Assembly (NCBI GenBank): GCA_907165135.1
Contig: OU015570.1
Location: 2,315,929-2,379,928, forward strand
Direction of reading: 5' to 3'
Source: Oikopleura dioica
Lineage: Eukaryota > Animalia > Chordata
Length of the DNA: 64,000 nucleotides
Part shown: positions 17,125 to 62,869 of the stretch, piece after piece
Position numbering within the stretch: the stretch's first letter is position 1
How the letters are laid out: every line of letters begins with the position of its first letter
Made by a program: the position numbers and the translations under genes
The notes under the pieces: model-generated
The model's input: only the letters and a program-made list of their open reading frames with translations
The model's database searches: none
What the model was told of the DNA's origin: nothing

Positions 17125-17357
17125 TTGACATCGATGTTGTGTGAGCAGGGCTTTAGACTACAGTGTGAGCGAGCAATTCAAATATGAGTGAACGGTGGCT
17201 AGATATTGGGAACGCATATCTGATCACCACCACGTCGTGAAAATTTGACGATTTGTGAGCGAGATAGTCGAGCAGCTATCTGTGAATAAGGTCGAGTTAT
17301 GAGCAAAACTTCTAGACCATTATACGGATTAGTCGAGCAGCTAATCACTTGACAACA

Positions 17358-20275: not shown

Positions 20276-20312
20276 AGTTAACGTATTTACACGTTTCTGT
20301 TGACTGAGCTAG

Positions 20313-21613: not shown

Positions 21614-22490
21614 GATGGATGAATTGTCCCTAAACTGTTAAACTTACCGGATGTCAATTAATCTCTTATATCTCTATTGATGGGCGTACCGATTATTTCA
21701 GTCACCAAAATATATGGTGGTTTTATACTGAAAGTAATTGGAACACGGGAATCAATCTCGAATATGTTTATAAACCCTGATAGGTGTGAGCAAAAAATAA
21801 TAAAATATATCTATATAATATTTTATGTTATACCTGTAAAGTCAGGGAAAAGAATGATAAAATTATAGAGATACAGTCGTTTTTATAGTGTAGGACACCA
21901 CCCATCGATGGCACGGACTTAGACTTGGTCGTATCAACTCGGCGTTGGCCATATCGCCAACGCTGGAATAGAAAGGGGCGAGCTGTCAAGGTATGATGGA
22001 GTGAAAGCCTTGGCGTTGGGCGCGTCACGCCTCACTGAGCATAATAACGTTGACCACGCGCGCTAGAATTCCATATTTCGAAGCGAAAACAGTAGGAAAA
22101 CCACTACAAGTCGCCCATCGAAAGACCCTGTAGCTGTCTGTAAACTTTTTCGCAACATCGAAATGCGGTATATTTTTGTAAAACAGCCTTTAGTAATGGC
22201 CGTTATTTTGTTTTTGGAATCGGTTGTTTTAGTTTACCCTTTTTATCTCTGTATCTAGGAAGACATTTATGCGGTGACTTAACATTATAAATTTCATTTT
22301 CAAAAAATGAGATGAGAAGATCAGTGTCAACAGATGGATATAATTTAGTGATATCTAAAGAAACGTAATCAAATTTTGACATGTCAAATTTCTCGGATTT
22401 GAACCACAATGAAAACTCTTTGGAATTTCGAACGCAAAATTTTGGAGAGAATGATGTCAAAATAGGTTCCAAAATATGTTTTAGAAGGAT

Positions 22491-41635: not shown

Positions 41636-44600
41636 TAGGGTTCGCGCCCAAAAATCAAGTGCCCGAAATACTTATTGTATCTGTCTAAATTTCAGATATA
41701 TTATAGATAAGGGCATTCAAAGAATATATTCTTTCAAAATTTTTCTAAATATAAGAGGGTTGAAGAGAAAATGAGCCCCAAAATTGGCGAAAAATGGGTT
41801 GAGCATGTTAGTCAGCCCAAAATTAAAAATTTCAAAAACGGGGATGATCAGTAGAATCTTCTGATCTTTATTTGATAAAAAAATTTTGGGAAACATCTAC
41901 GGTTTCGCTAGAAATTAGAAAAAACCGCCTTTTTTGGCAATATTTTTCTGTTACGTGATCATGCGCGCGCACGCGTAACAGCGCGTGATACGGGGTGGCA
42001 ACGCAAAATTCCAATCAATTTTGCCAGAATATTTTCATCCTTCGGTTTTAACAAAATAAATGAAAAAAGAATTATTTCGTTGAAATAATCAAATCGTAAA
42101 TAAACTCATGAGTAATATAAATTTATAATTTTAATAATAAAAAACTTCAAAAAGTCGTTTTAAAAACCATAATGATGAATAAAAACGGGTCAATAGATAT
42201 AAATTAAGGAGAGGGAGTGGGTGGGGATGGGGACAGGACTGAGATTGAAACACAGCTGCCTCTCTCAAGCCCATTTAAAATTAAAAGCCAGGGACGGGGC
42301 TGAGACGGCCCGAAGGGCCGTCAAGCCCATTTAAAATTAAAAGCCAGGGACGGGGCTGAGACGGCCCGAAGGGCCGTCAAGCCCATTTAAAATTAAAAGC
42401 CAGGGACGGGGCTGAGACGGCCCGAAGGGCCGTCAAGCCCATTTAAAATTAAAAGCCAGGGACGGGGCTGAGACGGCCCGAAGGGCCGTCAAGCCCATTT
42501 AAAATTAAAAGCCAGGGACGGGGCTGAGACGGCCCGAAGGGCCGTCAAGCCCATTTAAAATTAAAAGCCAGGGACGGGGCTGAGACGGCCCGAAGGGCCG
42601 TCAAGCCCATTTAAAATTAAAAGCCAGGGACGGGGCTGAGACGGCCCGAAGGGCCGTCAAGCCCATTTAAAATTAAAAGCCAGGGACGGGGCTGAGACGG
42701 CCCGAAGGGCCGTCAAGCCCATTTAAAATTAAAAGCCAGGGACGGGGCTGAGACGGCCCGAAGGGCCGTCAAGCCCATTTAAAATTAAAAGCCAGGGACG
42801 GGGCTGAGACGGCCCGAAGGGCCGTCAAGCCCATTTAAAATTAAAAGCCAGGGACGGGGCTGAGACGGCCCGAAGGGCCGTCAAGCCCATTTAAAATTAA
42901 AAGCCAGGGACGGGGCTGAGACGGCCCGAAGGGCCGTCAAGCCCATTTAAAATTAAAAGCCAGGGACGGGGCTGAGACGGCCCGAAGGGCCGTCAAGCCC
43001 ATTTAAAATTAAAAGCCAGGGACGGGGCTGAGACGGCCCGAAGGGCCGTCAAGCCCATTTAAAATTAAAAGCCAGGGACGGGGCTGAGACGGCCCGAAGG
43101 GCCGTCAAGCCCATTTAAAATTAAAAGCCAGGGACGGGGCTGAGACGGCCCGAAGGGCCGTCAAGCCCATTTAAAATTAAAAGCCAGGGACGGGGCTGAG
43201 ACGGCCCGAAGGGCCGTCAAGCCCATTTAAAATTAAAAGCCAGGGACGGGGCTGAGACGGCCCGAAGGGCCGTCAAGCCCATTTAAAATTAAAAGCCAGG
43301 GACGGGGCTGAGACGGCCCGAAGGGCCGTCAAGCCCATTTAAAATTAAAAGCCAGGGACGGGGCTGAGACGGCCCGAAGGGCCGTCAAGCCCATTTAAAA
43401 TTAAAAGCCAGGGACGGGGCTGAGACGGCCCGAAGGGCCGTCAAGCCCATTTAAAATTAAAAGCCAGGGACGGGGCTGAGACGGCCCGAAGGGCCGTCAA
43501 GCCCATTTAAAATTAAAAGCCAGGGACGGGGCTGAGACGGCCCGAAGGGCCGTCAAGCCCATTTAAAATTAAAAGCCAGGGACGGGGCTGAGACGGCCCG
43601 AAGGGCCGTCAAGCCCATTTAAAATTAAAAGCCAGGGACGGGGCTGAGACGGCCCGAAGGGCCGTCAAGCCCATTTAAAATTAAAAGCCAGGGACGGGGC
43701 TGAGACGGCCCGAAGGGCCGTCAAGCCCATTTAAAATTAAAAGCCAGGGACGGGGCTGAGACGGCCCGAAGGGCCGTCAAGCCCATTTAAAATTAAAAGC
43801 CAGGGACGGGGCTGAGACGGCCCGAAGGGCCGTCAAGCCCATTTAAAATTAAAAGCCAGGGACGGGGCTGAGACGGCCCGAAGGGCCGTCAAGCCCATTT
43901 AAAATTAAAAGCCAGGGACGGGGCTGAGACGGCCCGAAGGGCCGTCAAGCCCATTTAAAATTAAAAGCCAGGGACGGGGCTGAGACGGCCCGAAGGGCCG
44001 TCAAGCCCATTTAAAATTAAAAGCCAGGGACGGGGCTGAGACGGCCCGAAGGGCCGTCAAGCCCATTTAAAATTAAAAGCCAGGGACGGGGCTGAGACGG
44101 CCCGAAGGGCCGTCAAGCCCATTTAAAATTAAAAGCCAGGGACGGGGCTGAGACGGCCCGAAGGGCCGTCAAGCCCATTTAAAATTAAAAGCCAGGGACG
44201 GGGCTGAGACGGCCCGAAGGGCCGTCAAGCCCATTTAAAATTAAAAGCCAGGGACGGGGCTGAGACGGCCCGAAGGGCCGTCAAGCCCATTTAAAATTAA
44301 AAGCCAGGGACGGGGCTGAGACGGCCCGAAGGGCCGTCAAGCCCATTTAAAATTAAAAGCCAGGGACGGGGCTGAGACGGCCCGAAGGGCCGTCAAGCCC
44401 ATTTAAAATTAAAAGCCAGGGACGGGGCTGAGACGGCCCGAAGGGCCGTCAAGCCCATTTAAAATTAAAAGCCAGGGACGGGGCTGAGACGGCCCGAAGG
44501 GCCGTCAAGCCCATTTAAAATTAAAAGCCAGGGACGGGGCTGAGACGGCCCGAAGGGCCGTCAAGCCCATTTAAAATTAAAAGCCAGGGACGGGGCTGAG

Positions 44601-45338
44601 ACGGCCCGAAGGGCCGTCAAGCCCATTTAAAATTAAAAGCCAGGGACGGGGCTGAGACGGCCCGAAGGGCCGTCAAGCCCATTTAAAATTAAAAGCCAGG
44701 GACGGGGCTGAGACGGCCCGAAGGGCCGTCAAGCCCATTTAAAATTAAAAGCCAGGGACGGGGCTGAGTATTTTTCTATTTTTGTTTATAAGAAAATATT
44801 TAAAAAACCTTTAATAGAAAATAGAAAATGTTTTATTTGAAAAAAATATTTAATAATTTTTAGTTTTATATTTTTTAGATTTATATTTTTAATATTAATT
44901 GACTTTTTAAAAATCTTTCTTTGAAAAGAGAGAATTTCTTTGAAATGAAAGAAAATCGGATTTCGCGGCGTTCACCCTAGCCGCGTCAGAGAAATGCCTG
45001 AGGGCGAACGCCGCGCTGTGCGACGCGCGCCGCGCAAAGATGGTCAAAAATAGACCTTCAATTGTCAATTACAGGATGTTAGTCATCTGTTTCCCATAAT
45101 TTTTGAATGGAATATTGTTCTTCTTTATTGAAATTTTATATAGATCTAAAAAAATTCTGGGAAACTTTTGACTAACATGGTTTTTTAACATTAATTTCCC
45201 TATATCTCTTCAACCCTTTAATTTTTTTTTCTCGAAAATATGTTTTTTAGATCATCAAACAGGTTTATTCTACCTGTAGAAATTTGAAAACAATTCCATT
45301 TGTCTATCAGAAGATAGTTTTTTTGGGCGCGAACCCTA
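41636..45338. mobile_element. Non-autonomous hAT-type element (3.7 kb) inserted in the Polinton and carrying the 56-bp array
   Basis: TIR TAGGGTTCGCGCCCAAAAA at both ends with degenerate subterminal similarity. 8-bp TSD GCTATATT at 41628-41635 and 45339-45346. Confidence 0.9.
42265..44768. repeat. Tandem array of about 44.7 copies of a 56-bp unit containing a GAA-triloop hairpin
   Basis: Unit AAGCCCATTTAAAATTAAAAGCCAGGGACGGGGCTGAGACGGCCCGAAGGGCCGTC. The register shifts 4 nt per 60-nt line. No variant copies were seen by eye. Confidence 0.98.
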
Positions 45339-45807
45339 GCTATATTCTAAATCGTGAAAGAGATGCAGGGTACAATCCTTTTCTTTTAATGGCGTATATA
45401 ATCGGATTTGGTTTCGACCCGGAACCTTACTTTGGGAGAAGAAAAGATCGGCGAAAACTTCTTTATCTCACAGAATTCCACGATCAGCATGTTCATCTTA
45501 CCATCAAAGAAATCGAACATTATTTCGTTGTCAATTTTTGCTCTATCGATTACGATATTTATAACCGGAAATATCAGCCAGACAACTTCTTCCTTATCAG
45601 TGAAAGAACCGTATTTTTCCAAATTGAAAATGGCAACATTTGGTTCCATTGGATCGACGGATTCACACTGCTCCAGGCACTCGAGAAAAAACGTTGCATA
45701 AATTGCCCAAGTGATTTGCGTAAGTTATAAAAAATGGACTAGGAATAAGCATTTTTTTAAGTTTCAAAATACGCTCAATCGAGGAGTTCTTTAAAGTACC
45801 AGACTTT

Positions 45808-48800
45808 ATGACACTCCGTTATCGAGATCTCAAACGACTCAGTGTTGCGTTACAAAAAGACATCGAACTTTACGTCCTTCATGACTCACCCAACATAAGG
45901 CTCTTCCATGCCAAAAAGAAAAAATTCAAAAACGCGCCTCTTCGTCTCTTGGTTGATGACGGTGAGAAAAACATGGACACTGTCATATGGCCGATTCTGA
46001 TAATCCACAATGAAAGAGCAATACCAAACGATCGTGTGTGCCCAAATCCAGGGTGTTACTATAGAACCCATCTTACATTCAATTTTGAGAGACACTTCAA
46101 AATCTGTAGTCAGGCAAAAACACCGATAACCTCAAAGCAAACTGCGTACGGGCAACGAACCGACATCATTTGGAAGCTTGTTGAAGAAGCATATCTTCCT
46201 AAAGAAGCACTGAATTTTCGCAAAACAAAATTTGGTAAAGATTGTTTTTGTTAAAAATAATAATTTTTAAGTCTGCTATGATATTGAAACCTTTGAAAAA
46301 GCAATGCGGGAATCAACAGATTGTACAGTTGTCCACGCATCTCACCAGCTGCTGAGTATTGGTATTGGATCAAATTTTGGATACGAGTCTGTGATTGTAA
46401 GGGAAGATGACACTCCGGGAGCAGCGAAAAAAATGGTCAATCTCTTTGTGCAAAAATTGAAGATGGCGGTGGAATCTGCAGATTGTTTTCCAGAATATTT
46501 CTATCGCGCGATTGTAACACTAGAAACTGAAAAGCTTCTAAAAGACGACAAGATTGAAAAATCCCGATTGTCTGCTCTTCTTCGAAAACTCAAACAATAC
46601 ATGAAGATTGACGTTTTTGGCTTCAATTCAGCGAAATTTGATTTACCTGTATTGGTGCCCTACCTGTTTCCCGCTCTTCAGGCAGAGTTTGGGAAGTTTA
46701 ACGTCATCAAAAAGGGCGCAAGATATTTTCTCATCGAAACATCGTGCTGTAATTTCAAAGATGTGCTCAACTTTACGACTCCGATCAAACTGGCAAAGTA
46801 TCTGAAGCAAAATGGTGTCGAAGAAGAAAAAGGAATTTGGCCATACAATCTGTACAACTCGATCGAAGAACTGAAAGCTGCAGACATGTTTCCAACTCAC
46901 GATAAATTCTATTCCGATTTGAAGAAAGCCAACATCCCCCTTGAGCTTTATGAGGAGAATTTGAAGATGTTCACCGACTTTAAACGAGAAAATTCATCCT
47001 ATAACATGCGCGATTGGCTCAAAAGATACAATACCCTGGATGTTACTCCTCTTGCAAAAGCAATCGACAATTCTTTCAAAAACTTTCAAAAAGTTTTTGG
47101 AATGGATCCGGCCGTCTCCTTGAGCTTACCCGGTTTTGCTCAAAATTGCCTTTTCTCCCTCTACTCTGAAGATGCTGCACTATCACGTAAGTAAAATGAT
47201 CCTTTTCTGTGGTTTAATATCATTTAGACTCATTTCATCAGAAGAATGACGAAATAAGAACACTTTTTCGAAACAATATTGTTGGTGGACTGGTCAATGT
47301 TTTTTCTCGGTAAATCGCTTTTAGTTATCCAAACTTATCGTTTTTTAGCTATACTGAACTTGGTGATGAAGAAGCTCCTCACAATGCGAAATTCGCCCAG
47401 AATGGAGAGCGTTTCTCCAATATATCGTTTCTGGATTTTAACGCTCTCTATCTCTGGGCGGAAAATCAAAAGCTACCGACCACCCAGGGTATTCTTTGGG
47501 AGAAGAAATCAAACAATTTTGTCAAAAATATAATGACAAATGGAAACTCATTCGTTGCTCTTCAATGGCTTCTCTTTGCCGAAGAAAATGGTAAGAAATG
47601 GTATCATGAACATAACCTTATATCTTTTAAGACCCAAATCTGACTGACAAAAATGGTAACAGGATTCGCCTTCAGCATCAGTATTTCCGAGGGGAGCATT
47701 CAGAAGAGGGTCGCAAGGTCGACGGTTTTGCGATTGTCGATGGTGTCAAAGTATTTTGGGAGTTTCTTGGATGCAAATTTCACAAGGACTGCCCTCGGTG
47801 TCGCCCAAACGAGACAGATGAAGCTTGGGAAAGAAAAAAGGCATTCTTGGAGTCACGTGGTAAAGTCATCTTCATCCACGAATGTAAATGGAGAACAATT
47901 GCGCGCAGCGTCAAATGGAAATCAAAATACCTACCACTTATCGAAAAAAAAACAGGAACTGAAGAGCAAATTCTGGCAGGAATCAAGGATGGCTCGCTTT
48001 ACGGCTTCATTGTCGCTGACGTTCGATGTCCCCTTCCAATCTTCGAAAAATTCAAAAATCTAAATTTTCCTCCGGTTATACAGCGACTTCAAATGACACC
48101 AGAAATGCTCTCCCCATACATGAAATCTCGAGTCGAGAGAGAGAAAACAACACTAAGAGAAACCGTCGTGCAAACGTTCAATGGTGATGGACTGTTGATG
48201 TTGACAGAGACCGCAAAGTTTTACATGGACATTGGTCTCGAAGTAGGCAACATAACAAAATTTATTCAATACCGTGGAGAAAAGATGCTATCTAAATTCG
48301 TCAGTAGAATTACAGAAGGTAGAATTAAGGCAATTCTGGATAAAGAAAATGAGCTCGGACTTGTTTACAAGACAGTTGGTAATAGTTCCTACGGCAAGCT
48401 TGGACAAAAGGTTAAATCTATTTGTTCGACAGTAAATAACTCTATTAAGGTTGGGCAGCCAACAAACGTTTATGGTGACACGAGATTTTTGACAGAACAG
48501 TCAAGAAAAAAAACTTTCAAGTATTTTACCCCGCTTGAGATGGAAGACGGTGACTGTGACTATTACGAAATCACTCGAAATTCAACCAAGGTCACGGACA
48601 ATAAGCCTTTACCAATGTGCGTTGCAATCCTTCAGCACAGCAAACTTCTATTCTTACGATTCATCTATGATGTTGTGTTCGAGTTTTTTGAGCCCGGATC
48701 CTACAAACTCTGCTACTGCGACACTGACAGCATCGCAATAGGTAAGCACTCACTTCATATAAAAACTTATTTATTTTAAGCGACAACTCGCTCAGCAAAG

Positions 48801-49289
48801 TCTGGCCGGACAACGAGACTCGGAAAAAGCGAAGATACATTCTTCCCCATCGTAAAAGAGGGTCGATTAGAAGAGTTCAAAAAGGTTTGGACAAAGTGGT
48901 TCGTTCTTGACGATACCACTCGCACTGAAAAAACACCTGGGTTACTAAAGGTCGAGTGGGAGACTTCAGTGGGGTCGCTTGTGGCGCTGACATGCAAGAC
49001 ATATCAGTGTGAGGGGAAGGACAACAAGCCTGAAGAAGTGATCAAGCGATCGACAAAGGGGACACCACATTCTCATTCTATCGAGCAAACAACATTTAAA
49101 CGCGCTTTGAAAGATGAGCTTGCTGAAAGAGACAATCAAGTTGATATAAGTCGCCTTGGCCTTAGAAATCATAAAATGCAGCGTCTAACTGTCACAAAAA
49201 AAATGCTCAGTTCAATTTTCTATAAAATGCAGCTTGAATCTGACGGTATCACTTCGCGACCTTTGCAAATAAACGGTGTTTATCTTTAA
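45808..49289 (+). CDS. polB: Protein-primed family B DNA polymerase, about 1081 aa after splicing, with a VSR-like nuclease insertion. Introns at 46235-46271, 47187-47227, 47310-47348, 47591-47631, 48742-48780 and probably 48411-48449
   Basis: Splicing the GT-AG introns gives one ORF (3246 nt, all phases consistent). Motifs: ExoI VCYDIETF, ExoII GFNSAKFDL, ExoIII YNTLDV, NNIVGGLVNVFSR, motif A LDFNALYLWA, motif B KTVGNSSYGK, motif C YCDTDS, KTPGLLKVEW. N-terminal C2HC finger CPNPGC..RHFKIC. Insert SFVALQWL...GE..KVDG..WEFLGCKFHKDCPRC..IHECKW. Confidence 0.95.
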
Positions 49290-49311
49290 TCATCATTTTC
49301 CTTTTTTTAGA

Positions 49312-49848
49312 ATGCTTTTTGATTTTATGGAGCGCGATGAGCTTCTTTCGATCCTTGATAAGTTTGGCGGCAAGCTTGATTATCTGGACGCAACTGAGGA
49401 ACAATTCTTAAGGGAGAAAAATCTTTTAAGATTTCAAAGAAATCACATTATATTTCCGAAAAACCGTTCTCGAAAGACACGAGCAGAAAATATCACAATT
49501 ATTACAACTCTTGGTGGAGAATTTGACCTTCAAGTATTCATTCGCGAAATCTTGGATAGCCTTTCCTCGCCATTTCATATAATGATTGATTTTGGAGTGC
49601 TCCTGTTCCACCCGACTAGCCACGAATTCCGCTATATGTGGGCTGAGCGATATACAGCGCTTCCTTTACCACCAAGAATATCATCTGATGAAGAACGAGA
49701 TAATTTTTTTAATTCTTTTATTTCAATGGACATAAGCTCAACAGTTTTAGAGGCGCATGCCAGTCAATCTCATTTTGACAAGAGTGGCTTCTGTTTTCGG
49801 AAATTTCTGACATGCACTGTTTTCCTCTCCAAAATTCCAGATTTCTAA
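49312..49848 (+). CDS. Stand-alone 178-aa protein resembling the terminal-protein (N-terminal) domain of polinton/adintovirus pPolB
   Basis: ATG at 49312, intact ORF. PFHIMIDFGVLLFHPTSHEFRYMWA...ISSDEERDNFFNSFISMDIS...DKSGFCFRKFLTCTVFLSK resembles my recollection of the FKINxSFGFIL..tgE.RYFYA...SxW..itn.tf.v N-terminal block of pPolB (by eye only). Confidence 0.6.
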   Translation: MLFDFMERDELLSILDKFGGKLDYLDATEEQFLREKNLLRFQRNHIIFPKNRSRKTRAENITIITTLGGEFDLQVFIREILDSLSSPFHIMIDFGVLLFHPTSHEFRYMWAERYTALPLPPRISSDEERDNFFNSFISMDISSTVLEAHASQSHFDKSGFCFRKFLTCTVFLSKIPDF

Positions 49849-51105
49849 AGCAGCTCCTTTGTCACGTTCCCGAATTCATCCAATGTCAACTTCGTCATCA
49901 CACTCGTAAAAACAACTTAATTTTTGTTAATCATTTTTTATCTGCATGACACTTACCTAAACTAAGATTTTCTGTAACATCAGTTTCAAAATCAATAACA
50001 AAACTTATCCAACCATTTGAATCTTCTAATTCTCCCTGAAACTCGTGTGAAAATAAAAGCGCTTTCTTGAAATCAAAAATTGTGTCAATCGCAGGTGATG
50101 AAACATCATAGATATTGCAAAGTATGTCCTGATATTTAAGATAGGGTTCCAAAGGGAATTCAGACGAAATTGACTTAAAACATTTTAGATAGGATAAAAG
50201 AACTCGATATTTACCATAGGATATCCATGACAAGACTTCCCATTGAGCAAAATATCAAATGTTTTCACATTGTTTTGTAGGAAAGAGATAGTCTCGGAAG
50301 AGTTGCTTCCGAGCAGCAATGGCGTCTTTGTTATTCCTGCAAAAAGATAAAGTGGAGTGTTCCCTCCAACAAGATTTTCTAATCGGACGCGGCGATCATG
50401 TTGAGGAATAGATCTTATTTTGGTTGTGAGATCATCGTACTTGTAGGTGATTGTGTTTCTGTTTGAGATGTGATCACGCAAATCTTTACTCGAAACATAT
50501 TCCACTTTTGCAAAGCAGTCTTTTAGCTCAAAGACACCCTCAATGTCTGGGTTCTCGTCCTTGATTTTGATTGTCGAAAACAATGCTTCCTGACGTGCAA
50601 AGGACAAAGCCATTTCCACATTAGGTGGAAGCGGCTTGTTATCCATGAGAAATCCGTCAGTAGGAATCATCATCAGCTGGTAGACATATTTACCATCCTT
50701 AAGGATAGTTCCTGATCTGCGGGTATTGACTAGATTTTGCTGATTTGTAGAAGTCAATTCACCATAATTGAAGTCATCAAAATATCCTTCTGTCCGAAAA
50801 AATGATTCCATATAGTTTTTCGTAAAATTTACTTTCTTGAAAAGCCAATCTTTCAAGTAGTAATCGATCTGAGTGTTTGGAGTTATTGGTTGACTTTGCA
50901 ACTCAATTTTAAGTGCTTTAAACTGCTTTGGCGCAAAACCGTTTTCAACAACATACTTTGCATCGACTTCGATGTTGAAAAAAATTTGAATATTATTTTT
51001 AACAAGGCAAAGGTTCGGGTCAGCTTCAAAAACGAATTCGAGCTTATCGTTGTTGTTTACTCGAGGATAATGTTTTTTGATCAGTTTTTTATCTGGAACA
51101 CTCAT
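49845..51105 (-). CDS. Major capsid protein (double jelly-roll type), 392 aa, with introns at 50174-50214 and 49916-49956 (41 nt each)
   Basis: ORFs 50185..51105 and 49931..50233 join through GT-AG introns into one frame ending ...GWISFVIDFETDVTENLSLVVFTSVMTKLTLDEFGNVTKELL*. It has Polinton MCP-like motifs (LEFVF, DGFLMDNKPLPPNVEMALSFAR, TFDILLNGKSCHGYP) and sits in the morphogenesis module. Confidence 0.85.
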
Positions 51106-51221
51106 TTTTGAAAAATAAAATCATTCACTCCTTTTTATATTCATTGAGAATGCCCTAAAGGGCTCAAAATAATTTGCCGATATCAAACAATAAAAATCAC
51201 TTCAAATACCTAAGAGCCATT

Positions 51222-51665
51222 TTATTCCCCATAATTTGGTGACATGATGAAAAAACTGTATGCAGTGAGAATGCAGGTTGATGAGGACGCAAAATTATCA
51301 GAAGAAGATAAATCGATAGAGTAGATGGTATAGTCTTTGTGAACGCTCTTGGCGTCGAGAATAAGATAATCACCAGTCTCAAGGTAAACGACTGCCGTGT
51401 ACTCGTTCATGATTGAAAATTCACACTGAAAGCAGGGTATCGCAGGTGCGTAGGGCGAGTTCTCCTGCACGACAGGAAGTGTTTTCCATTCAAGTTTAGA
51501 CGCATAACTTTGCTCGGGTGTATTTGTAGGCGCTCGAAAAATATGTGGATCCATAGTGCTATGGTTTTTGAACGAAAATTCGCTCGATGCTATTTCACTG
51601 AAAAAGCTCTGTGATTTTTCTGCTTTCTTATTTTTTGAAAACGCGTTTTTCACTTTCTTCATCAT
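51222..51665 (-). CDS. Hypothetical 147-aa protein upstream of the capsid gene
   Basis: Intact ORF in the structural module; no recognisable motif. Confidence 0.45.
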   Translation of the reverse strand: MMKKVKNAFSKNKKAEKSQSFFSEIASSEFSFKNHSTMDPHIFRAPTNTPEQSYASKLEWKTLPVVQENSPYAPAIPCFQCEFSIMNEYTAVVYLETGDYLILDAKSVHKDYTIYSIDLSSSDNFASSSTCILTAYSFFIMSPNYGE

Positions 51666-51723
51666 TTTGTGATTTGTAACAAAAAGGCTTGCTTATATGC
51701 GGGTAAAATAGCTCGGGGTGATT

Positions 51724-52286
51724 TTATTTCAAAAATAATAGAAAAATAAAGACAGTTATTGCAAGTCCCAAATCGATGTATCTCTTTGGCTTGAGAAAGG
51801 TTTTTTGAACATCGAGAAATTGCTTCATCCCTTTTTCTTTTACCAACATGAGATACTTGTTCATGAGCCGATCAACAAGGATAATTTTCATCTTTAATTG
51901 AAGTTTTTTCATTGATGATTCATCAATTACTTGAGAAGCTGTATTCATGACGAGAACAGTTGCGCATAGAACAGCTTGCAAATTTTTGAAAGACGCTTCT
52001 TCACACGCAAGTTTCTCAAGTATATCTAGACAAACATAAGTTCATCTTGCCCTATTTACCTACCTTCATACGTAAAAGAAAACCAAACTGCGGATTCAAT
52101 TGTAGTAACACGTCTTCGATATGCATCAAGAAGTCTCTTCCTATTGACATCCATGACGGATAAGTTCTGGTTGGAAAGTTGGTGAGTTTGCTCAATTGTT
52201 TGATAGGCCTCTTGGCTAGTTTGGACTAAATTTTCCGAGAGAAGAAGATTCGCAACATCAACGAAAAAATTTGCTTCGCTGCACAT
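51724..52286 (-). CDS. 174-aa helical tail-anchored protein, possibly Bcl-2-like, with an intron at 52026-52063 (38 nt)
   Basis: ORFs 52056..52373 and 51724..51981 join in frame (FTYE|DILEKL). C-terminal TM KPKRYIDLGLAITVFIFLLFLK. The Bcl-2 assignment is speculative. Confidence 0.5.
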
Positions 52287-52446
52287 TTTGACGATTTTTC
52301 GCAGGACGCTTGGCTTAAATGCAAAACAAAAAAAGCCCGAGGCAAAAGAGGACAGTTTCAATAAAAGACACATTACTCAGTATTTTTTTATTTATTGTCG
52401 CGAACACACCAATTTTTAGAAAGGAAATGGGTAAAGAGCACAGAAA

Positions 52447-52581
52447 TCATTTATGTCGCTTCTTTTTGGATTTTTTGTGTTTTTTCTTGACAGTGTTCTT
52501 CGATATCGGTTGCTTATTCTTTGAATCTTTTTTTCCCCAGAATTTTTCTCGATTTCGAAGCGATCGCGAGATTGCGGCCAT
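52447..52581 (-). CDS. Small Lys/Arg-rich peptide (44 aa), candidate DNA-condensing core protein
   Basis: MAAISRSLRNREKFWGKKDSKNKQPISKNTVKKKHKKSKKKRHK, overlapping the penton-like ORF. Confidence 0.35.
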   Translation of the reverse strand: MAAISRSLRNREKFWGKKDSKNKQPISKNTVKKKHKKSKKKRHK

Positions 52582-52951
52582 TTGTGTCGATTTTAAGGTT
52601 GATATAGGCAAAATCTGGCGGAATTGAAATTTCGCCACGGAGTTCGATGGCGAGTTTTGCTTTTGATAGGTCATCAACGTGAAGCTCATATTTATTTACA
52701 ATTTGAGCCTGATAATTGTAACAAGTAACCCCCGAGGGGATTAAAAAATTCGAAAGAACATGTTTTTTAATCGAGTCTTCAATATAGAAAGCCACGTAAA
52801 TTCCAGACGGGTTCGTACTCAAATAGAGGCCACTTTCAAAAAGGGATACTGTCATTGTTAGAAGATCACCAGGGCGAAATTTTGGAAGGGCGAATTCAAA
52901 ATTTTTTGCTGTTGTAAGATTCAAAATCGTCGGCGATTTTACGAAGCTCAT
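52514..52951 (-). CDS. Putative minor capsid (penton, single jelly-roll) protein, about 145 aa
   Basis: Predicted beta-rich, lies between the integrase and capsid genes. GIYVAFYIED...NKYELHVDDLSKAKLAIEL...AYINLKI loosely fits the penton C-terminal pattern. It is short for a penton. Confidence 0.4.
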   Translation of the reverse strand: MSFVKSPTILNLTTAKNFEFALPKFRPGDLLTMTVSLFESGLYLSTNPSGIYVAFYIEDSIKKHVLSNFLIPSGVTCYNYQAQIVNKYELHVDDLSKAKLAIELRGEISIPPDFAYINLKIDTNGRNLAIASKSRKILGKKRFKE

Positions 52952-53954
52952 ATAAGTAATGTGAGCCGGAGACTTCTTTGCCACCTAAGCTGACGAGTTT
53001 ATACCAAACAACTCCCGCCTTTTGCTTATGGGACTTGATTTTGTAGACGTCCGTCGACCAGTTCTGCTTGTATCCCTTGTCAAAAAGACTCTTTTTTCTC
53101 AAAATTCGAACAATGTTTCCTTTCTTGAGTTTTGGCTCGACTACAAGATCAATGTCAGGATAGAGCTTTTTAAAGATTTTTTCGGTATCTTCGTAGGTTA
53201 CACGCTCAGGGGCCATTCCAATTGAACGATGAGGCGTTGAATTATATCCAGCTGCGACGTCATCAATAATATCAAGCCATTTTATTGTTTTATTTGTCGT
53301 CATGTATTTTTCAATTTTTGTTTTTAAAGTCCGATTCACACGTTCAACCATTGAAGCTTTGATTTTCGTAAGAATACTGTAATGGTGGATATTAAATTGG
53401 TCGAGTATTTTACGCGTCGGAGCATTATAAAATTCTTTTCCTTCATCCGTTATTAAGGTGTTTGGCAGTTCATCAAGGCCTGACAGTATCTCCTCGACAG
53501 CTTTACTCACTTGAGCTCCACTTTTTTTCTTTAATGGCCTAACCCAGATAAATTTTGAGAAACAGTCAATCATGACTAGAATGTATACAAAATTCCTGTT
53601 TGCATATTTCATCTTTGGACTTCTTGTATACTCGATTAAATCAGCCATAAATATCTGACGCGGATGATTGACGATTATTCGCCGTCTCGGAAATTTCTTT
53701 TTGACGATTCTTCCATGTTTACTATTTGCTTCATCAGCTTGCAAAAAATCCTTAATTTTGCTCGAATACGCCGGTTTGCTTTTAACTCTCCGGTAAATTG
53801 ACTCAATGTCATTGTCAATATCTGCTTGCGTGCCGACATTTATACCGGCAGGTTTTGCATATTTACGGAGGTTAACCATTTGATGAAATAAAAATTGATC
53901 TGCGACTTTTATGTTTCCATGATAAATAAACACCCGGGGTGATTTTGGATTCAT
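52896..53954 (-). CDS. Retroviral-like (RVE/c-integrase) integrase, 352 aa, intronless
   Basis: DDE motifs FMADLIEY, LVMIDCFSKFIW, LITDEGKEF, ASMVERVNRTLK and YNSTPHRSIGMAP, consistent with the 6-bp TSD. Confidence 0.95.
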   Translation of the reverse strand: MNPKSPRVFIYHGNIKVADQFLFHQMVNLRKYAKPAGINVGTQADIDNDIESIYRRVKSKPAYSSKIKDFLQADEANSKHGRIVKKKFPRRRIIVNHPRQIFMADLIEYTRSPKMKYANRNFVYILVMIDCFSKFIWVRPLKKKSGAQVSKAVEEILSGLDELPNTLITDEGKEFYNAPTRKILDQFNIHHYSILTKIKASMVERVNRTLKTKIEKYMTTNKTIKWLDIIDDVAAGYNSTPHRSIGMAPERVTYEDTEKIFKKLYPDIDLVVEPKLKKGNIVRILRKKSLFDKGYKQNWSTDVYKIKSHKQKAGVVWYKLVSLGGKEVSGSHYLYELRKIADDFESYNSKKF

Positions 53955-54929
53955 TTATTTTCGCCAGTTTAATTTTCTAGATTTTCGTTTTTTTGAACGT
54001 TCGTCTTCGTCAGATGACGATGACGTGTATGATGACGTCTCTTGTTCTGATGAGCTTGATTCTGATGATGAGAACTTCCGTTTCCTCGGAACTGATTTGA
54101 CATTTTCTTTTTTTGCCACTTTTTCTTCTTTTTTGAGAGATTTTTTGATTTCATTGTCGCTTTTTACTGTCGCTGTAAAGGTTGGTAATTTTGTTGTGTA
54201 TTTCTCTTGGATTTCGAAAAATCTTCGGAAATCGTTCTCGCTGATAATGTAGGACTTCATGCCGGAAACTGACCAGCACACTGGATAAGTCGCCATTATA
54301 TCCGTAAACATACGATAATTTGATCGATGCGCCTTCGGCGATAAGTTGATAAGAAAGTAGGGATACTTATCATATTTTGAATGCTCTTCTGCTTGTTTGT
54401 AAGCTTGGGCGAGCCCAAGAGAGCGACAGACTCGAAGGTTGATTGACGTGTCCAGACAATTCCGCAGAAGCACCTGCATGTTACAGCTGTTTCTTATGTC
54501 TCGAGCATAACGTCCCTGTGAATAACTATTTTGAGTCATTATCATAACACTCAAGTTTCGTTTACCACTGGTTACGCGAAATAAATGATCAATAGCCTCC
54601 GAATTAACGGCTTTATCGTAGAGATCGTCCAATACAATAAGCGAGTGACAGTCAAGATCGTCAATGTCGTCTTGATCAGGTAGACCTTGCGCAAAATGAA
54701 TGGGAATGTTGATTCTATCGGATTGATCCCACGTTATCGGTTTTTCCTTGAGAAATCTCGGATAGTAGTAAACAATTTGTGAAGGGATTCTTTCGAAGAG
54801 ATGGAAATTTTCACAAAGCAGACCGGCAATATAAGTTTTCCCAGATTGCGAGGATCCTGAGAAAATGCTTCGAAACGGATAAGGCAATCGGTAGTCCTCG
54901 GCAATGTCTCCCGAGATTGAAAAACTCAT
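53955..54929 (-). CDS. A32/FtsK-HerA-type genome-packaging ATPase, 324 aa, with a Ser/Lys-rich C-terminal tail
   Basis: Walker A FSGSSQSGKT, Walker B LIVLDDLY, and SGKRNLSVMIMTQN...RDIRNSCN. Confidence 0.92.
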   Translation of the reverse strand: MSFSISGDIAEDYRLPYPFRSIFSGSSQSGKTYIAGLLCENFHLFERIPSQIVYYYPRFLKEKPITWDQSDRINIPIHFAQGLPDQDDIDDLDCHSLIVLDDLYDKAVNSEAIDHLFRVTSGKRNLSVMIMTQNSYSQGRYARDIRNSCNMQVLLRNCLDTSINLRVCRSLGLAQAYKQAEEHSKYDKYPYFLINLSPKAHRSNYRMFTDIMATYPVCWSVSGMKSYIISENDFRRFFEIQEKYTTKLPTFTATVKSDNEIKKSLKKEEKVAKKENVKSVPRKRKFSSSESSSSEQETSSYTSSSSDEDERSKKRKSRKLNWRK

Positions 54930-55574: not shown

Positions 55575-56014
55575 TTAGGACGATGGAAAGATATTTCTGC
55601 GACACATTCCACATGTTTTGTTGCGATGATCGGTGACGTATCTCTCAAAGCAATTCTTGTGAAGTTCGTGACCACACTCTGGCCTGATTGCTTTTTGCCC
55701 GACTAAATTTGTTTATTTTACATATTTGAAATTATTGACGGCTTACTTTCAATATTTTCGATACATATGTAGCATTTGCTCGGTTCTCCTTCCCGTTTTC
55801 CGAATTCAACCGGGCCACTGAGCTCGAGAATCTGCATCTCATTCGTTTGATAAATTGCCTGATTTTCTCGTTGACTGGTAAGCTCGACAAAGCCTTCAAT
55901 ATTCCCAATATGTGTTCTGCTTAGACGACCTGCTATGAAACACATCGGACAGGAAATGGCATCGTTCGAGAGTTCCCAAAAAATTGAGCATTCCCAGCAG
56001 AAAAAAATAGACAT
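55575..56014 (-). CDS. Second zinc-ribbon plus RING-H2 paralog, intron 55703-55746
   Basis: FFCWEC...CPMC. Spliced CYICIENIEIGQKAIRPECGHELHKNCFERYVTDHRNKTCGMCR, with the intron at the same position as in the first paralog. Confidence 0.85.
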
Positions 56015-56158: not shown

Positions 56159-56665
56159 TCACCAAAACATATTTTCACGGCACATCCCACAAGAAGAGTG
56201 GTAATTGATGTATTTGTAGAAGCACGATGCGTGAACATGATGACCACATTCAGGTCGAACGGCTTTTTCTCCAACTTATTTTTTATTTTTATGAATCAAT
56301 AATTTTTACATACACTCGATTTCTTCAATGCAAATATAGCATGTGTCGATTTCACCCTCTGTTTTCATGAATTCGATAGGTCCTTTCAGAGTGGGATTTT
56401 CCTCAAATTCGTAAATGATCTCTCTCTCAATTTCTTGTTGATTTTCAGCTGGAGCCTGATAATTGCCTTCAACAATTGCAGTTGCTTGATCAGCGTAAAC
56501 GATTTCTGTCTCATTAACTTGTTGATTTTCATTTGGGGCTTGATAATTGCCTTCAATAATTGCAATTAGTGTGTCTGGAGAGGAATGATCAGCGTTACAT
56601 TGCGGACAAATTGAGCTTTCTTGAAGCTCAATAAAAATTATACAATTCCAGCAGTAGAAAATCAT
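56159..56665 (-). CDS. Zinc-ribbon plus RING-H2 E3 ubiquitin ligase-like protein (RNF115/RNF126-like architecture), intron 56275-56313
   Basis: N-terminal FYCWNC...CPQC. Spliced C-terminus CYICIEEIEFGEKAVRPECGHHVHASCFYKYINYHSSCGMCR is a full C3H2C3 RING. Confidence 0.85.
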
Positions 56666-59593: not shown

Positions 59594-59999
59594 AATAGGT
59601 AGTGGCTTAAAACGTCGTCCAGTTGCTGCATGTGCGGCCTAAAACGTCTCTCTTATTCCTGCGTGTGTTGCTCAAAACGTCTTTCCTGTTGCTGCATGTA
59701 TTGCCTAAAACGTCTTTTGAGCCCCTAGGCTTAATGAATGAGTGAGTCCAGAGATGCTTGGTAAAGCCACGTCGCCTAACAGCCCCATAATTTCAACAAT
59801 AGCTAGCCTCGACGATGACTCGGCTTCTTATGTAACGATGAGACAGGAAAAACAGATATTAGCCTAGGGGCCCAAAAGACGTTTTAGGCAACACACGCAG
59901 CAACTGGAAAGACGTTTTAGGCCTACACATGCAGGGACAGGAGAGACGTTTTAGGCCGCACATGCAGCAACTGGACGACGTTTTAGGCCACCACCTATT
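59594..59999. mobile_element. Foldback MITE with about 30-bp subrepeats (AAAACGTC)
   Basis: AATAGGTAGTGGCTTAAAACGTC / GACGTTTTAGGCCACCACCTATT; arms about 140 bp. Confidence 0.8.
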
Positions 60000-61866
60000 T
60001 TAATAATCGGCGCGATAATTCTCAACGCGAGCAAGACATCATCCGCGATTCACTTTCCGTTTTCCACCCTGTAGATGTCATTCACATTTCCTGCTACCCA
60101 ACAAAACAAAGAAGCGCATGAAATTTGCTTCGTGTTGGGCCGCTGTGCGACCTTCATAATTCATAAAACCATCGTGCTGTTTGTTTACTCTCGCGAATTC
60201 AATGGCATCCATGCCGCCAAATCGTCCTTCGCCTCTCCATTCCTCGAACTGCCAGAAATTGACAGGAATGGAAAGCCTTCCAGTCACATCCGGCATTCGG
60301 CCTTTATTATTTCCCCAAGCCAAGGGCAAATGTGCCACCTGACAAATAAAGCGATTGTCCTTATCGACTTTACAGATCTCCTTGGCTTACAAGCCAGTGA
60401 TGTGATCTTTCTATGATTCACATTTTCGATGCTTGATCGGGCCATAATTATGCGCGAAAGTAAGTCTCAAGAATTTGTCGCCTTTATACACACACGTAAA
60501 AATGTACACGTGACCGACGGTGGTGTCAAATTGTACTCCAACACTGTCATTCATAACTCCACTGTATTCGAGCGGGCTCGAGGTTTGTTTAAACAGAAGC
60601 TCGAGTTCGGTCCGAATTCCGATCTCGGAATTTGGGATTCTTTACAGAATTCAGTCACCACGAAAACCTGCCTGCGAATCTGCCTAAACAACACCCTCGT
60701 GTATCTCTGTTCGTATTAGACTGGTTTATTACGACCACAGTTTAGTGCGACAGAAACATAATACAGACAAACTGCTCGCGAGAGACGAAGGGCTGGAAAC
60801 TGTTTTCTTTAGATCGCGAAAGGAAGTGGCAGTCCAAAAAGACCATACAAACCTCGATTGTCGTGAATTTTGTCGAAGAAATTTTAGAAATGGAACACTG
60901 GCGTAAAATGGAAGATAAGGACAGCTTCTCATGCAAAAGTAGAGACTCAAGAATATTTTATTATTCTTGAGCTCCTCGGCAGTTTGCGCTCGAAAATCAT
61001 CTTTGAGATTTTTCATTAAATGAAAAAGACACGATTTAGAATTCGCGAAAAGATTCTCTTCTGTGAGCTGTTTTTGAATTGCATTGAGTTTGTCCAAAAA
61101 GTCCCTTTTGAAAAGTTCTTATTATTATTTCCTTTGAAAAAATAGCGATATCTTTGTCAAGCCGTTAATTTGCTGTAAATACAGACCGATTGGTCCCTCA
61201 GAAACCGCAAAAGAGGTACCTGATCGGAAATCAAAAATTTCGCAAGCTTCTTACAAAGGGACTTGACCTGCCATGAATTATTTTTTAGCGGATGCCCTTG
61301 GCCTTGCATTAGGGTCCGGCATGATCGGAGGACCTTATTTTTCAAAAGCGAAAATCTTATAGTATTAAGAAAAAAATCTTATGGGATTTAAGGGATTCGA
61401 ATACGGCGAAAAAAATGATAGTGCCAATATTCTAATTCACCGCCGGAATCGCCGATTTCTCTCGGTTTTTCATACTTAAAATGGCTGCACAAACTTCTCT
61501 TTTTCAAATTTTGATGCATTCAGCCCTAAAAATCACAAATCTGCATAAAAAAATCTAAAAAAATTCAAGGTTTTTATGTGCTGTCCATTTGAAAATTATC
61601 CATTATTTATCATTATGTGAAAATTGAGGAGGCGCGCTCTGATTGGCTAAAGAGGAAGACATTCTCAGGAGTTAATTTTGAAGGAAGATAATTCTGAGCT
61701 TCCGCGATTTTGTCATTGTTGATGAAAAAGCTCTTCGTCGATTAAAAAAATTTAGTCCCCTGTCATATAGAAAGCCAAAGTTGCTAAAAAATATCGCCAA
61801 GCTTATCGAAATAATAAGCTTTCTCCTTCGGGCCGTCTCAGCCCCGTTCCTTGATTTTTAACTTTA

Positions 61867-62186
61867 TAAAAGGTTTCGGGACTGGCCAACGCTGCCTGCG
61901 TACAAAAAGACTACAAGTCTAACTCTAAGTGAGCCTTTATTGTGCGTGAGTTGCACTCTAGCGTGTGCATCTCACTGTTGGTGTTGAGAGTAAAATGTGC
62001 GTGTCTAGTTGAGAACAGTTCCAGTTTTATAGGGTGATAATTGTTAGGTGGCGCAGTGTAGAAAGTAATCAATCAACCGGTTTCACCTGTGAAACCGGTG
62101 GTACAAGGAATACAGCGTCGCATTCATGTGTATTCACCCATGACTACGTATGAGACATGAAACGTAAGGTTTCCCGAAACCTTATA
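61867..62186 (-). mobile_element. Solo LTR, 320 bp
   Basis: Inverted termini TA(A)AAGGTTTCGGGA / TCCCGAAACCTTATA and 4-bp TSD TTTA (61863-61866, 62187-62190). TATAAAA and AATAAA on the minus strand. Removing it restores the motif also seen at 6350-6460. Confidence 0.75.
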
Positions 62187-62869
62187 TTTAAGGGGCTTGA
62201 CAAAGGCATTTAACTCTGAGGTGATCAATCTCAGTTTTGTCCCCAACCACACCCACACCCGTTTGCATAAAAATGAAAATAATTCCTATTTCTTAGTTTG
62301 TTATGGTTATCGTCTTAGAAATTTCTTTTTCTCATAACGAAAATTAAAATTTTTCAATAATTCTGAAAGAAATTATGAAAAATTATGAAAAAAAATTTTG
62401 ATTTTAGGTGAATCGATCTCACCACCTCTTGCTTTTCAAGCGAGAGCGCTAACATTTGAGCCACCAAGGGAGGATCCTGGCAGTAATAAAAATCGCTAGG
62501 CGGAGCTGACCAATCAGAGCGCACTTGGCTCTGCATTCAAATTTTCATTAAAGCCCTGAAAAGGGTTGAATCGGAGGTTTTCTGGAGAACCAGTGACCGG
62601 AATTGAATTCCTTAGGGTCGAATTAGTGGAATCGTGAAGTTTCATTGAAATTAAATTTTTTGTCCTAATCATGCCGGACCCTACCTTGCATCGTCCGCGA
62701 TTTTCGGATTTATGAGGATGAAGGCGTCCCTGAGAAATAGCTGATTAATTTATGCAATTTCTTGGCTTTGCACTCAGCTCAGATGTAAAAGTGCCAATGA
62801 AATCAAAAACTGCCAAGAGTCGCGAATGTCTGTTGTTGTGGTCCCGTCACAACAAGAATGAAAATGTTT

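What the first reader, a model, noticed from the sequence alone, without database searches (positions are those of the whole stretch)
49312..49848. Terminal-protein-like domain encoded as a separate gene downstream of polB
Seen: PolB starts at 45808 with only about 75 aa before the zinc finger and exonuclease, so it lacks the long N-terminal region. An intact 178-aa ORF starts 22 nt after the polB stop. Its motif string (FHIMIDFGVLL..TSHEFRYMWA...SGFCFRKFLTCTVFLSK) resembles the N-terminal block of polinton/adintovirus pPolBs and stops where the vOTU domain would begin. Established: in Polintons TP, vOTU and Pol are one polypeptide, whereas adenoviruses and PRD1/phi29 encode TP separately. Inference: an independent TP/Pol fission with relocation, removing the need for proteolytic release of TP. 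The PolB N-terminus and the 144-aa upstream gene both look like decayed OTU remnants with no catalytic Cys/His.
Basis: inference. Interest (0 to 1): 0.82.

Follow-up and report, generated by a model that had tools for sequence, protein, structure and literature searches.

The report
Stand-alone terminal-protein gene after polB
A conserved 178-residue gene just after the DNA polymerase gene of an integrated polinton-like element is a free-standing copy of the terminal-protein (primer) domain that related elements carry fused to the front of their polymerase; a similar split is already published for a coral adintovirus, so this is a new variant, not a new principle.

Summary
An intact ATG-to-stop ORF of 178 codons (49312-49848, +) starts 22 nt after the stop of a protein-primed family B polymerase gene. 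That gene has only 77 residues ahead of its zinc finger. The ORF is a real gene: 56 relatives, mostly free-standing proteins of 169-197 aa, all unnamed, with no Pfam or PDB relative. Its core is homologous to the N-terminal domain of 1176-1295-aa polinton-type polymerases (hhalign 94.9 %, E 4.5e-8). In those proteins a vOTU Cys loop follows that domain directly. The AlphaFold model (pLDDT 91.5) has the strand and helix order published for the PRD1/adenovirus-type terminal-protein fold. A Ser-Gly pair sits in the loop where the DNA-linking residue lies; Ser is present in 36 of 36 relatives. No other TP-like segment and no OTU-like segment exists in the 64 kb. Three points are not supported or need a caveat:
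- The claimed "decayed OTU remnants" are not supported.
- The upstream ORF has no ATG start and no relatives.
- polB is not one ORF: it has 5 interruptions, and the three measured look intron-like.
Priming itself is inferred. A separate TP gene in a polinton was already reported (Stylophora adintovirus, PMC11071308). Verdict: new variant of a known kind, interest 0.55.

The parts
49312..49848 (+). ORF178: free-standing terminal-protein-like gene. It has an N-terminal helical extension (about residues 1-45) and then a D1-type alpha/beta core. Ser158-Gly159 sit in the loop between helix alpha2 and strand beta4.
49290..49311 (+). 22-nt spacer between the polB stop and the ORF178 ATG. A pyrimidine run plus AG ends 1 nt before the ATG. 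AATAAA lies at 49268 and TATAAAA near 49222, both inside the polB 3' end.
   Evidence: read from the sequence; function of these signals inferred
45808..49289 (+). [quoted passage not shown] It has a short N-terminus with no TP domain and no recognisable vOTU. The reading frame is interrupted 5 times: 3 changes of frame and 2 in-frame stop interruptions.
45284..45730 (+). It has no ATG at its start, no relatives and no family, TP or OTU match. It is unverified as a gene.
52896..53954 (-). Retrovirus-type (rve) integrase, an uninterrupted ORF of 352 aa.
   Evidence: PF00665, E 4e-12
53955..54929 (-). ATPase-like ORF of 324 aa. Walker A and B motifs were read by eye, and there is a weak PHROG P-loop hit. 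Its stop abuts the integrase ATG.
49931..52984 (-). Block of unassigned minus-strand ORFs convergent on ORF178. They are candidates for the morphogenetic module, but none was identified.
42213..44768 (.). Candidate left end of the element: a 36-nt block (42213-42248) followed by a perfect 56-bp x 44.7 tandem array (42265-44768).
61825..62260 (.). Candidate right end: inverted matches to the 56-bp unit (61825-61866, 88 %) and to the 36-nt block (62225-62260, 86 %). The evidence is weak.

Best explanation
ORF178 encodes a free-standing terminal protein (TP) of the PRD1/adenovirus/polinton D1 type, and it serves the pPolB encoded just upstream. In related animal polinton-type polymerases the same domain sits at the N-terminus and is followed by a vOTU protease, a zinc finger, the exonuclease and the palm. 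Here the polymerase starts 77 residues before the zinc finger, and the TP domain is a separate 178-aa protein with an extra N-terminal helical extension. Inferred mechanism: the helical extension docks the protein on PolB. The hydroxyl of Ser158, in the flexible loop between alpha2 and beta4, accepts the first nucleotide at a genome end. The protein then stays linked to the 5' end. Because primer and polymerase are separate chains, no proteolytic release is needed, which would explain why no vOTU can be recognised. Homology, fold order, the conserved Ser-Gly loop and the domain make-up of PolB are shown. Docking, priming, the linking residue and the reason for vOTU loss are inferred. How the gene is expressed is open: the options are a TATA-like box inside the polB 3' end, or a splice acceptor 1 nt before the ATG.
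For: The gene is real and conserved. There are 56 relatives, 24 of them 169-197 aa long, and all 28 aligned members start at the same Met and end just after the same motif. Homology to the polymerase N-terminal domain is supported by hhalign of the 28-member family against 15 carriers: 94.9 %, E 4.5e-8, ORF178 residues 69-178 aligned to P0059 residues 397-508. The family HMM hits residues 9-78, 7-62, 88-164 and 155-240 of 1176-1242-aa polymerases, with E from 6e-9 to 5e-5. The long-polymerase HMM hits ORF178 as the only TP-like segment among 1617 six-frame segments of the window. In 14 of 15 carriers a vOTU Cys loop follows that domain. The AlphaFold model has pLDDT 91.5 and pTM 0.88, with the order b0-b1-a1-b2-b3-a2-loop-b4. 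This is the fold that PMC11071308 describes for D1 and the PRD1 and adenovirid TPs, with the linking Ser/Tyr between a2 and b4 and a Gly or Pro nearby. Ser is present in 36 of 36 and Gly at +1 in 33 of 36 family sequences that reach the loop. That loop is the lowest-confidence block of the model. Foldseek against BFVD returns an adintovirus C2H2 protein, a MELD-virus PolB and bird 'densovirus' PolBs at probability 0.85-1.0. Y-family polymerases recur among the weak PDB hits, as the paper reports for D1. Homology of the window's PolB reaches the last residue of relatives (1221 of 1221, 1230 of 1230) before its own stop.
Against: No direct match was found to any experimentally proven TP. PDB Foldseek gave nothing significant (best E 0.05). 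No PRD1 or adenovirus TP appeared in the BFVD top 50. BFVD TM-scores are modest (0.35-0.39). In the profile alignment the Ser-Gly loop falls in a gap of the fused relatives, which carry a conserved Pro/Thr motif there instead. No clear terminal inverted repeats were found (weak candidates). PolB in this copy is interrupted 5 times, and one interruption is a bare in-frame stop, so this copy may be inactive. Linkage of the family to polB in other elements was not checked.
Confidence: 0.65

Rival explanations
1. ORF178 descends from the TP domain but no longer primes. It acts as an accessory factor, for example a DNA-binding or polymerase-binding protein like the little-finger domain from which this fold is thought to derive. 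Priming would then be done by something else or not at all.
For: The fold is shared with the DNA-binding LF/PAD of Y-family polymerases. The loop differs from that of the fused relatives. No proven TP was matched.
Against: The only invariant non-start residue of a family that has diverged to 18 % identity is a Ser in exactly the loop that carries the linking residue in PRD1 and adenovirid TPs. A pPolB without any TP elsewhere in the window needs a primer protein.
Confidence: 0.15
2. ORF178 is not a separate gene. It is a 3' exon joined by splicing to polB or to another upstream exon, using the acceptor-like site just before its ATG.
For: A pyrimidine run plus AG ends 1 nt before the ATG. The spacer is only 22 nt. 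polB itself shows intron-like interruptions.
Against: All 28 aligned family members begin at the homologous Met, and 24 representative clusters are 169-197 aa long. PolB homology reaches the very C-terminus of relatives before the polB stop. An acceptor before the ATG would equally serve a non-coding leader.
Confidence: 0.07
3. The family is real, but this copy is a relic. The element is decaying, and ORF178 is open only because it is short and the insertion is young.
For: PolB has 5 interruptions, including a bare in-frame stop. No capsid or protease gene could be recognised. No clean terminal repeats were found. The array next to the element is odd.
Against: The three measured interruptions each carry 42-71 nt of surplus DNA, and 683 of 689 profile positions are kept in order. 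That pattern suggests short introns, not decay. The integrase, the ATPase-like gene and ORF178 are all open.
Confidence: 0.1

Closest known systems
D1 (terminal protein) domain of polinton, adintovirus and bidnavirid pPolBs (Krupovic, Kuhn, Fischer, Koonin 2024, PMC11071308)
   Same: There is profile-level homology. The position relative to vOTU is the same in the fused relatives. The order of strands and helices is the same, and a hydroxyl residue with a neighbouring Gly or Pro lies in the alpha2-beta4 loop.
   Different: Here the domain is a separate polypeptide with about 45 extra N-terminal helical residues. Its gene lies after polB, not at the polymerase's 5' end.
Separate TP gene of the Stylophora coral adintovirus (reported in PMC11071308)
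   Same: It is a polinton-type element of an animal in which TP is detached from pPolB.
   Different: In that element a catalytically active vOTU is still fused to pPolB. Here no vOTU is recognisable and only 77 residues precede the zinc finger. I did not fetch that virus, so I cannot say whether its TP belongs to the same family or where its gene lies.
Adenovirid pTP and tectivirid PRD1 TP (stand-alone TPs of the same fold according to PMC11071308)
   Same: Each is a stand-alone protein with helical additions to the D1 core. The adenovirid linking Ser is followed by Gly, as in ORF178.
   Different: Those proteins are much larger (the adenovirid one has a long helical insertion), and neither came back as a hit in my searches. 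To my own knowledge their TP genes lie directly upstream of pol, whereas here the order is pol then TP. Adenovirid Pol keeps an inactivated vOTU.
phi29-type TP (gp3)
   Same: Only the proposed role, protein priming for a pPolB.
   Different: The phi29 TP is an elongated all-helical protein. ORF178 is alpha/beta, and no PDB match was found.

Membership tests
PRD1-like / D1-type terminal protein | Fold: a four-stranded sheet (optional beta0) with two helices, in the order b1-a1-b2-b3-a2-b4 | tested here: met
   The AlphaFold models give E45-47, E59-66, H73-83, E88-100, E105-109, H126-153 and E161-174. The definition comes from PMC11071308. The order of elements was tested; a 3D superposition on a TP was not.
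PRD1-like / D1-type terminal protein | Ser, Thr or Tyr in the unstructured loop between alpha2 and beta4, with a Gly or Pro nearby | tested here: met
   Ser158 is invariant (28 of 28 and 36 of 36) and Gly159 is present in 33 of 36. The loop is the lowest-pLDDT block of the model.
PRD1-like / D1-type terminal protein | Homology to the domain directly N-terminal of vOTU in polinton-type pPolBs | tested here: met
   hhalign 94.9 %, E 4.5e-8. HMM hits fall at the N-termini of 1176-1242-aa polymerases. A Cys loop follows the domain in 14 of 15 carriers.
PRD1-like / D1-type terminal protein | Structural likeness to the LF/PAD of Y-family polymerases and to proven TPs | tested here: inconclusive
   Y-family polymerases make up 13 of the listed top PDB hits, but at E 0.08-0.3 and probability <=0.51. 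No PRD1 or adenovirid TP appears in the BFVD top 50.
PRD1-like / D1-type terminal protein | Covalent link to the 5' ends of the genome and priming of DNA synthesis | not testable with these tools
   Sequence and models cannot show this.
phi29-type terminal protein | Elongated all-alpha fold | tested here: not met
   The model is alpha/beta. No PDB hit was found by sequence or by fold.
Polinton / Maverick / adintovirus-type element | Protein-primed family B polymerase | tested here: met
   tblastn and HMM against 1176-1295-aa relatives, E down to 3e-44 and 4e-38. The Pfam PF03175 hit is weak in the window and clear in relative P0070.
Polinton / Maverick / adintovirus-type element | Retrovirus-type integrase | tested here: met
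   PF00665, E 4e-12.
Polinton / Maverick / adintovirus-type element | Capsid proteins, packaging ATPase and maturation protease | tested here: inconclusive
   The ATPase-like ORF rests only on Walker motifs read by eye and a weak PHROG hit. No capsid or protease gene was recognised.
Polinton / Maverick / adintovirus-type element | Terminal inverted repeats | tested here: inconclusive
   None of 40 nt or more was found. Two short inverted matches about 20 kb apart are candidates only.
vOTU (D2) domain in the window's PolB or in the upstream ORF | Sequence similarity to the vOTU of related pPolBs, with its Cys loop | tested here: not met
   A vOTU HMM built from 14 carriers gave a best E of 0.076 on the PolB N-terminal segment and nothing on the upstream ORF. 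The window-wide search gave E>0.3. hhalign probabilities were below 1 %. A fold test was not possible.

The most novel reading that the evidence does not exclude
ORF178 would represent an old and widespread lineage of animal polinton-like viruses. Independently of adenovirids, this lineage detached the terminal protein into a compact gene of about 180 aa, moved it to the 3' side of polB and then lost the vOTU protease altogether. That would be a natural replicate of the proposed link between TP fission and vOTU loss. Ser-Gly would be the linking site, and expression would go through a splice acceptor placed just before the ATG.
Probability: 0.35. Interest if true: 0.65.

Novelty: new variant of a known kind. 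Interest (0 to 1): 0.55.

Why it matters
PMC11071308 proposes that vOTU exists to cut TP off the polymerase and becomes dispensable once TP is a separate gene. So far this rests on adenovirids (vOTU inactivated) and one coral adintovirus (vOTU still active). A diverse, unannotated family of compact stand-alone TPs, paired here with a polymerase that has no recognisable vOTU, would add an independent data point at the far end of that series. It also gives a sharply defined candidate linking residue: an invariant Ser followed by Gly. Finally, it supplies a profile with which TP genes can be annotated in polinton-like contigs, where they are now 'hypothetical'.

Tried and rejected
- **Family and sequence searches on ORF178.** Pfam, PHROGs and PDB sequence searches found nothing, whether run with ORF178 alone or with all 28 family members.
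- **PDB Foldseek.** No significant hit.
- **Upstream ORF.** It gave no hit in any of the following:
  - Pfam
  - PHROGs
  - PDB sequences
  - the word search
  - hhalign against the TP family and the carriers
  - BLASTP against the PolB N-terminus
  - a vOTU HMM

  I therefore dropped the OTU-remnant reading as unsupported.
- **Chance ORF.** Rejected because of the 56 relatives.
- **C-terminal extension of PolB.** Rejected because PolB homology ends at the relatives' last residue before the polB stop.
- **A second TP or OTU copy upstream.** Searched in six frames over the whole window; none was found.
- **Terminal repeats.** The tool found none. Sensitive blastn gave only two short inverted matches.
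- **Other element ORFs.** They remain unassigned.
- **Names for family members.** None exist.
  - fetching the DNA of relatives
  - any joined polB model
  - fetching PRD1, adenovirus, phi29 or Stylophora adintovirus TPs as comparators. None of these came back as a named hit.

Full report
**Observation.** The ORF is there as described. The last polymerase-frame stop ends at 49289, so the spacer is 22 nt. The first polymerase ORF starts at ATG 45808 and has 77 residues before a C-x4-C-x12-H-x3-C finger.

**Setting.** The ORF lies in an integrated polinton-type element.
- Upstream on the same strand is a protein-primed family B polymerase.
- Downstream, a block of minus-strand ORFs converges on ORF178. 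It includes an rve integrase (PF00665, E 4e-12).
- The block also includes an ATPase-like ORF with Walker A and B motifs read by eye. Its stop abuts the integrase ATG.
- Capsid and protease genes could not be recognised.
- No long terminal inverted repeats were found. Two short inverted matches about 20 kb apart are candidate ends only.

**Is it a gene?** Yes.
- The word search found five relatives, four of 175-178 aa and one 116-aa fragment, at 52-79 % identity.
- A profile of these, run against 1.84 billion representatives, found 56 proteins at E<=1e-3. Of these, 24 are 169-197 aa long, 28 are shorter fragments and only 4 are longer.
- In an alignment of 28 full-length members, with identity down to 18 %, all start at the same Met and all end a few residues after the same C-terminal motif.
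- None carries a name, none matches a Pfam family, and the profile finds nothing in PDB sequences.

**What is it related to?**
- *Longer hits.* Two of the four longer hits gave the lead: P0052 (402 aa) and P0059 (791 aa, an uncharacterised protein of the sea star Patiria miniata). Both have C2H2 fingers followed by the ORF178-like core. In P0059 the order is two tandem cores, a Cys loop of OTU type, a zinc finger, and then the start of the exonuclease.
- *Full-length polymerases.* A word search with that part of P0059 returned polymerases of 1176-1295 aa. P0070 has PF03175.
- *Profile-profile comparison.* The 28-member family against 15 such carriers gives 94.9 % probability and E 4.5e-8. ORF178 residues 69-178 align with P0059 residues 397-508.
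- *Local HMMs agree in both directions.* The family HMM hits the N-terminal 7-240 residues of the long polymerases (E 6e-9 to 5e-5) and P0059 twice (E 2e-18). The long-polymerase HMM hits ORF178 and most family members.
- *What follows the domain.* In 14 of 15 carriers a conserved Cys loop follows it, and a zinc finger lies about 112 residues further on, just before the exonuclease.
- *The window's polymerase.* It aligns with these relatives from about their residue 300-500 to their last residue. It therefore corresponds to the part from the zinc finger onward.
- *Whole window.* A six-frame search of all 64 kb finds ORF178 as the only TP-like segment and no OTU-like segment.

**Fold.**
- *Model.* With the 28-sequence alignment AlphaFold gives pLDDT 91.5 and pTM 0.88. 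The model has N-terminal helices, then beta0, beta1, alpha1, beta2, beta3, a long alpha2, a loop at 154-160, and beta4.
- *Published TP fold.* PMC11071308 describes the D1 domain of polinton pPolBs as the terminal protein.
  - D1 is homologous to the PRD1 and adenovirid TPs.
  - It has a four-stranded sheet with an optional extra strand, plus two helices.
  - The linking Ser or Tyr lies in the loop between alpha2 and beta4, next to a Gly or Pro.
  - Stand-alone TPs carry extra terminal helices.

  ORF178 fits each of these points.
- *Conserved loop.* Apart from the start Met, Ser158 is the only invariant residue of the family, and Gly159 follows it. Among all family sequences that reach the loop, Ser is present in 36 of 36 and Gly in 33 of 36. 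The loop is the least confident block of the model.
- *Fused relatives.* They have a conserved Pro/Thr motif at this place instead.
- *Foldseek against BFVD.* It returns an adintovirus C2H2 protein (E 8.5e-5 and 2.7e-4), a MELD-virus PolB and bird 'densovirus' polymerases at probability 0.85-1.0. The last group is the one the paper treats as carrying a fused TP.
- *Proven TPs.* The phi29, PRD1 and adenovirus TPs that I had in mind did not come back as hits.

**State of polB.** The span 45808-49289 is not one open frame. By my count the coding path is interrupted 5 times, by 3 changes of frame and 2 in-frame stop interruptions.
- Four body pieces cover 683 of 689 profile positions in order.
- Each of the three junctions between them carries 42-71 nt of surplus DNA. 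Short introns would look like this; point damage would not.
- One further in-frame interruption is a single stop with homology on both sides.
- I could not decide between introns and damage. No tool here predicts introns, and I did not fetch DNA of relatives.
- I searched the pieces apart and built no joined model.
- The integrase, the ATPase-like ORF and ORF178 are uninterrupted.

**Claims that failed.**
- The upstream ORF (45284-45730) has no ATG until codon 36. It has no relatives, no family or PDB match, and no similarity to the TP family, to the carriers or to the PolB N-terminus.
- A vOTU HMM from 14 carriers gives at best E 0.076 on the PolB N-terminal segment.
- With 77 residues before the finger, against about 112 in relatives from the Cys loop to the finger, a complete vOTU cannot be present in that ORF.
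- 'Decayed OTU remnants' is therefore unsupported, though not excluded.

**Expression (inference).**
- The spacer is too short for a promoter.
- AATAAA lies 44 nt before the ATG, and TATAAAA lies about 85-90 nt before it.
- A pyrimidine run plus AG ends 1 nt before the ATG.
- An internal promoter, alternative splicing from the polB transcript, or trans-splicing would all fit. Nothing here decides between them.

**Comparison with what is known.** Stand-alone TPs of this fold are known in tectivirids and adenovirids. PMC11071308 already reports a Stylophora coral adintovirus with TP as a separate gene and an active vOTU still on the polymerase, and it states that the split arose independently in several polinton groups. 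The following differs here:
- The protein is a compact form of about 180 aa and belongs to a diverse, unannotated family.
- The gene lies after polB. To my own knowledge, TP genes of phi29, PRD1 and adenoviruses lie before pol.
- The polymerase has no recognisable vOTU.

Whether the coral TP belongs to this family is unknown.

- Relatives include proteins of sea stars, and the fold hits are adintovirus-like. I therefore did not fetch loci of relatives by look-up, pattern or accession, and the gene-order survey was not done.

**Verdict.** This is a new variant of a known kind. Confidence is about 0.9 that the protein is a D1/TP homologue and about 0.65 that it serves as the primer. Interest is 0.55.

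Noticed in passing
window 42265-44768; also 61825-61866 and 42213-42248 / 62225-62260: A 56-bp unit is repeated 44.7 times with every copy identical, about 500 bp upstream of the polB region. One inverted partial copy (88 %) and a 36-nt inverted match (86 %) lie about 20 kb to the right. These could be degenerate element ends. Perfect identity across the array could also be an assembly effect.
   Followed up: partly
window about 17300-24200, minus strand: Remains of an LTR-type retroelement (Integrase_H2C2, E 3e-8), split over many short ORFs. It is unrelated to the finding.
   Followed up: no
P0059 (Patiria miniata LOC119726482), residues about 214-324 and 402-508: This sea-star polymerase N-terminus carries two tandem TP-like domains before its vOTU Cys loop. 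A duplicated primer domain is not mentioned in the paper I read.
   Followed up: partly
window 55718-56014 and 56306-56665, minus strand; 56410-56564: Two small paralogous Cys-rich ORFs have the same N-terminal and C-terminal Cys motifs. An 84-bp tandem repeat lies inside the second. Their function is unknown.
   Followed up: no
window upstream of ATGs at 51665 and 56665, minus strand: The same TATA-like motif lies about 25-35 nt before two minus-strand ORFs. It may be a shared promoter element of the element.
   Followed up: no
window 59608-59717 and 59876-59991: Two arrays of a 33-bp repeat lie in inverted orientation about 160 bp apart. This is a hairpin-like structure of unknown meaning.
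   Followed up: no
window 53954/53955: The integrase ATG directly abuts the stop codon of the ATPase-like ORF. The tight gene packing seen at polB/ORF178 is therefore a general trait of this element.
   Followed up: no
window 45240-45251: A second pyrimidine run plus AG ends exactly where the stop-free stretch of the upstream ORF begins. This hints that the stretch could be an exon and not a gene with its own start.
   Followed up: no
P0009 (252 aa) and P0017 (241 aa): Two family members carry an insertion of about 57 residues in the middle of the core, near model position 102.
   Followed up: no
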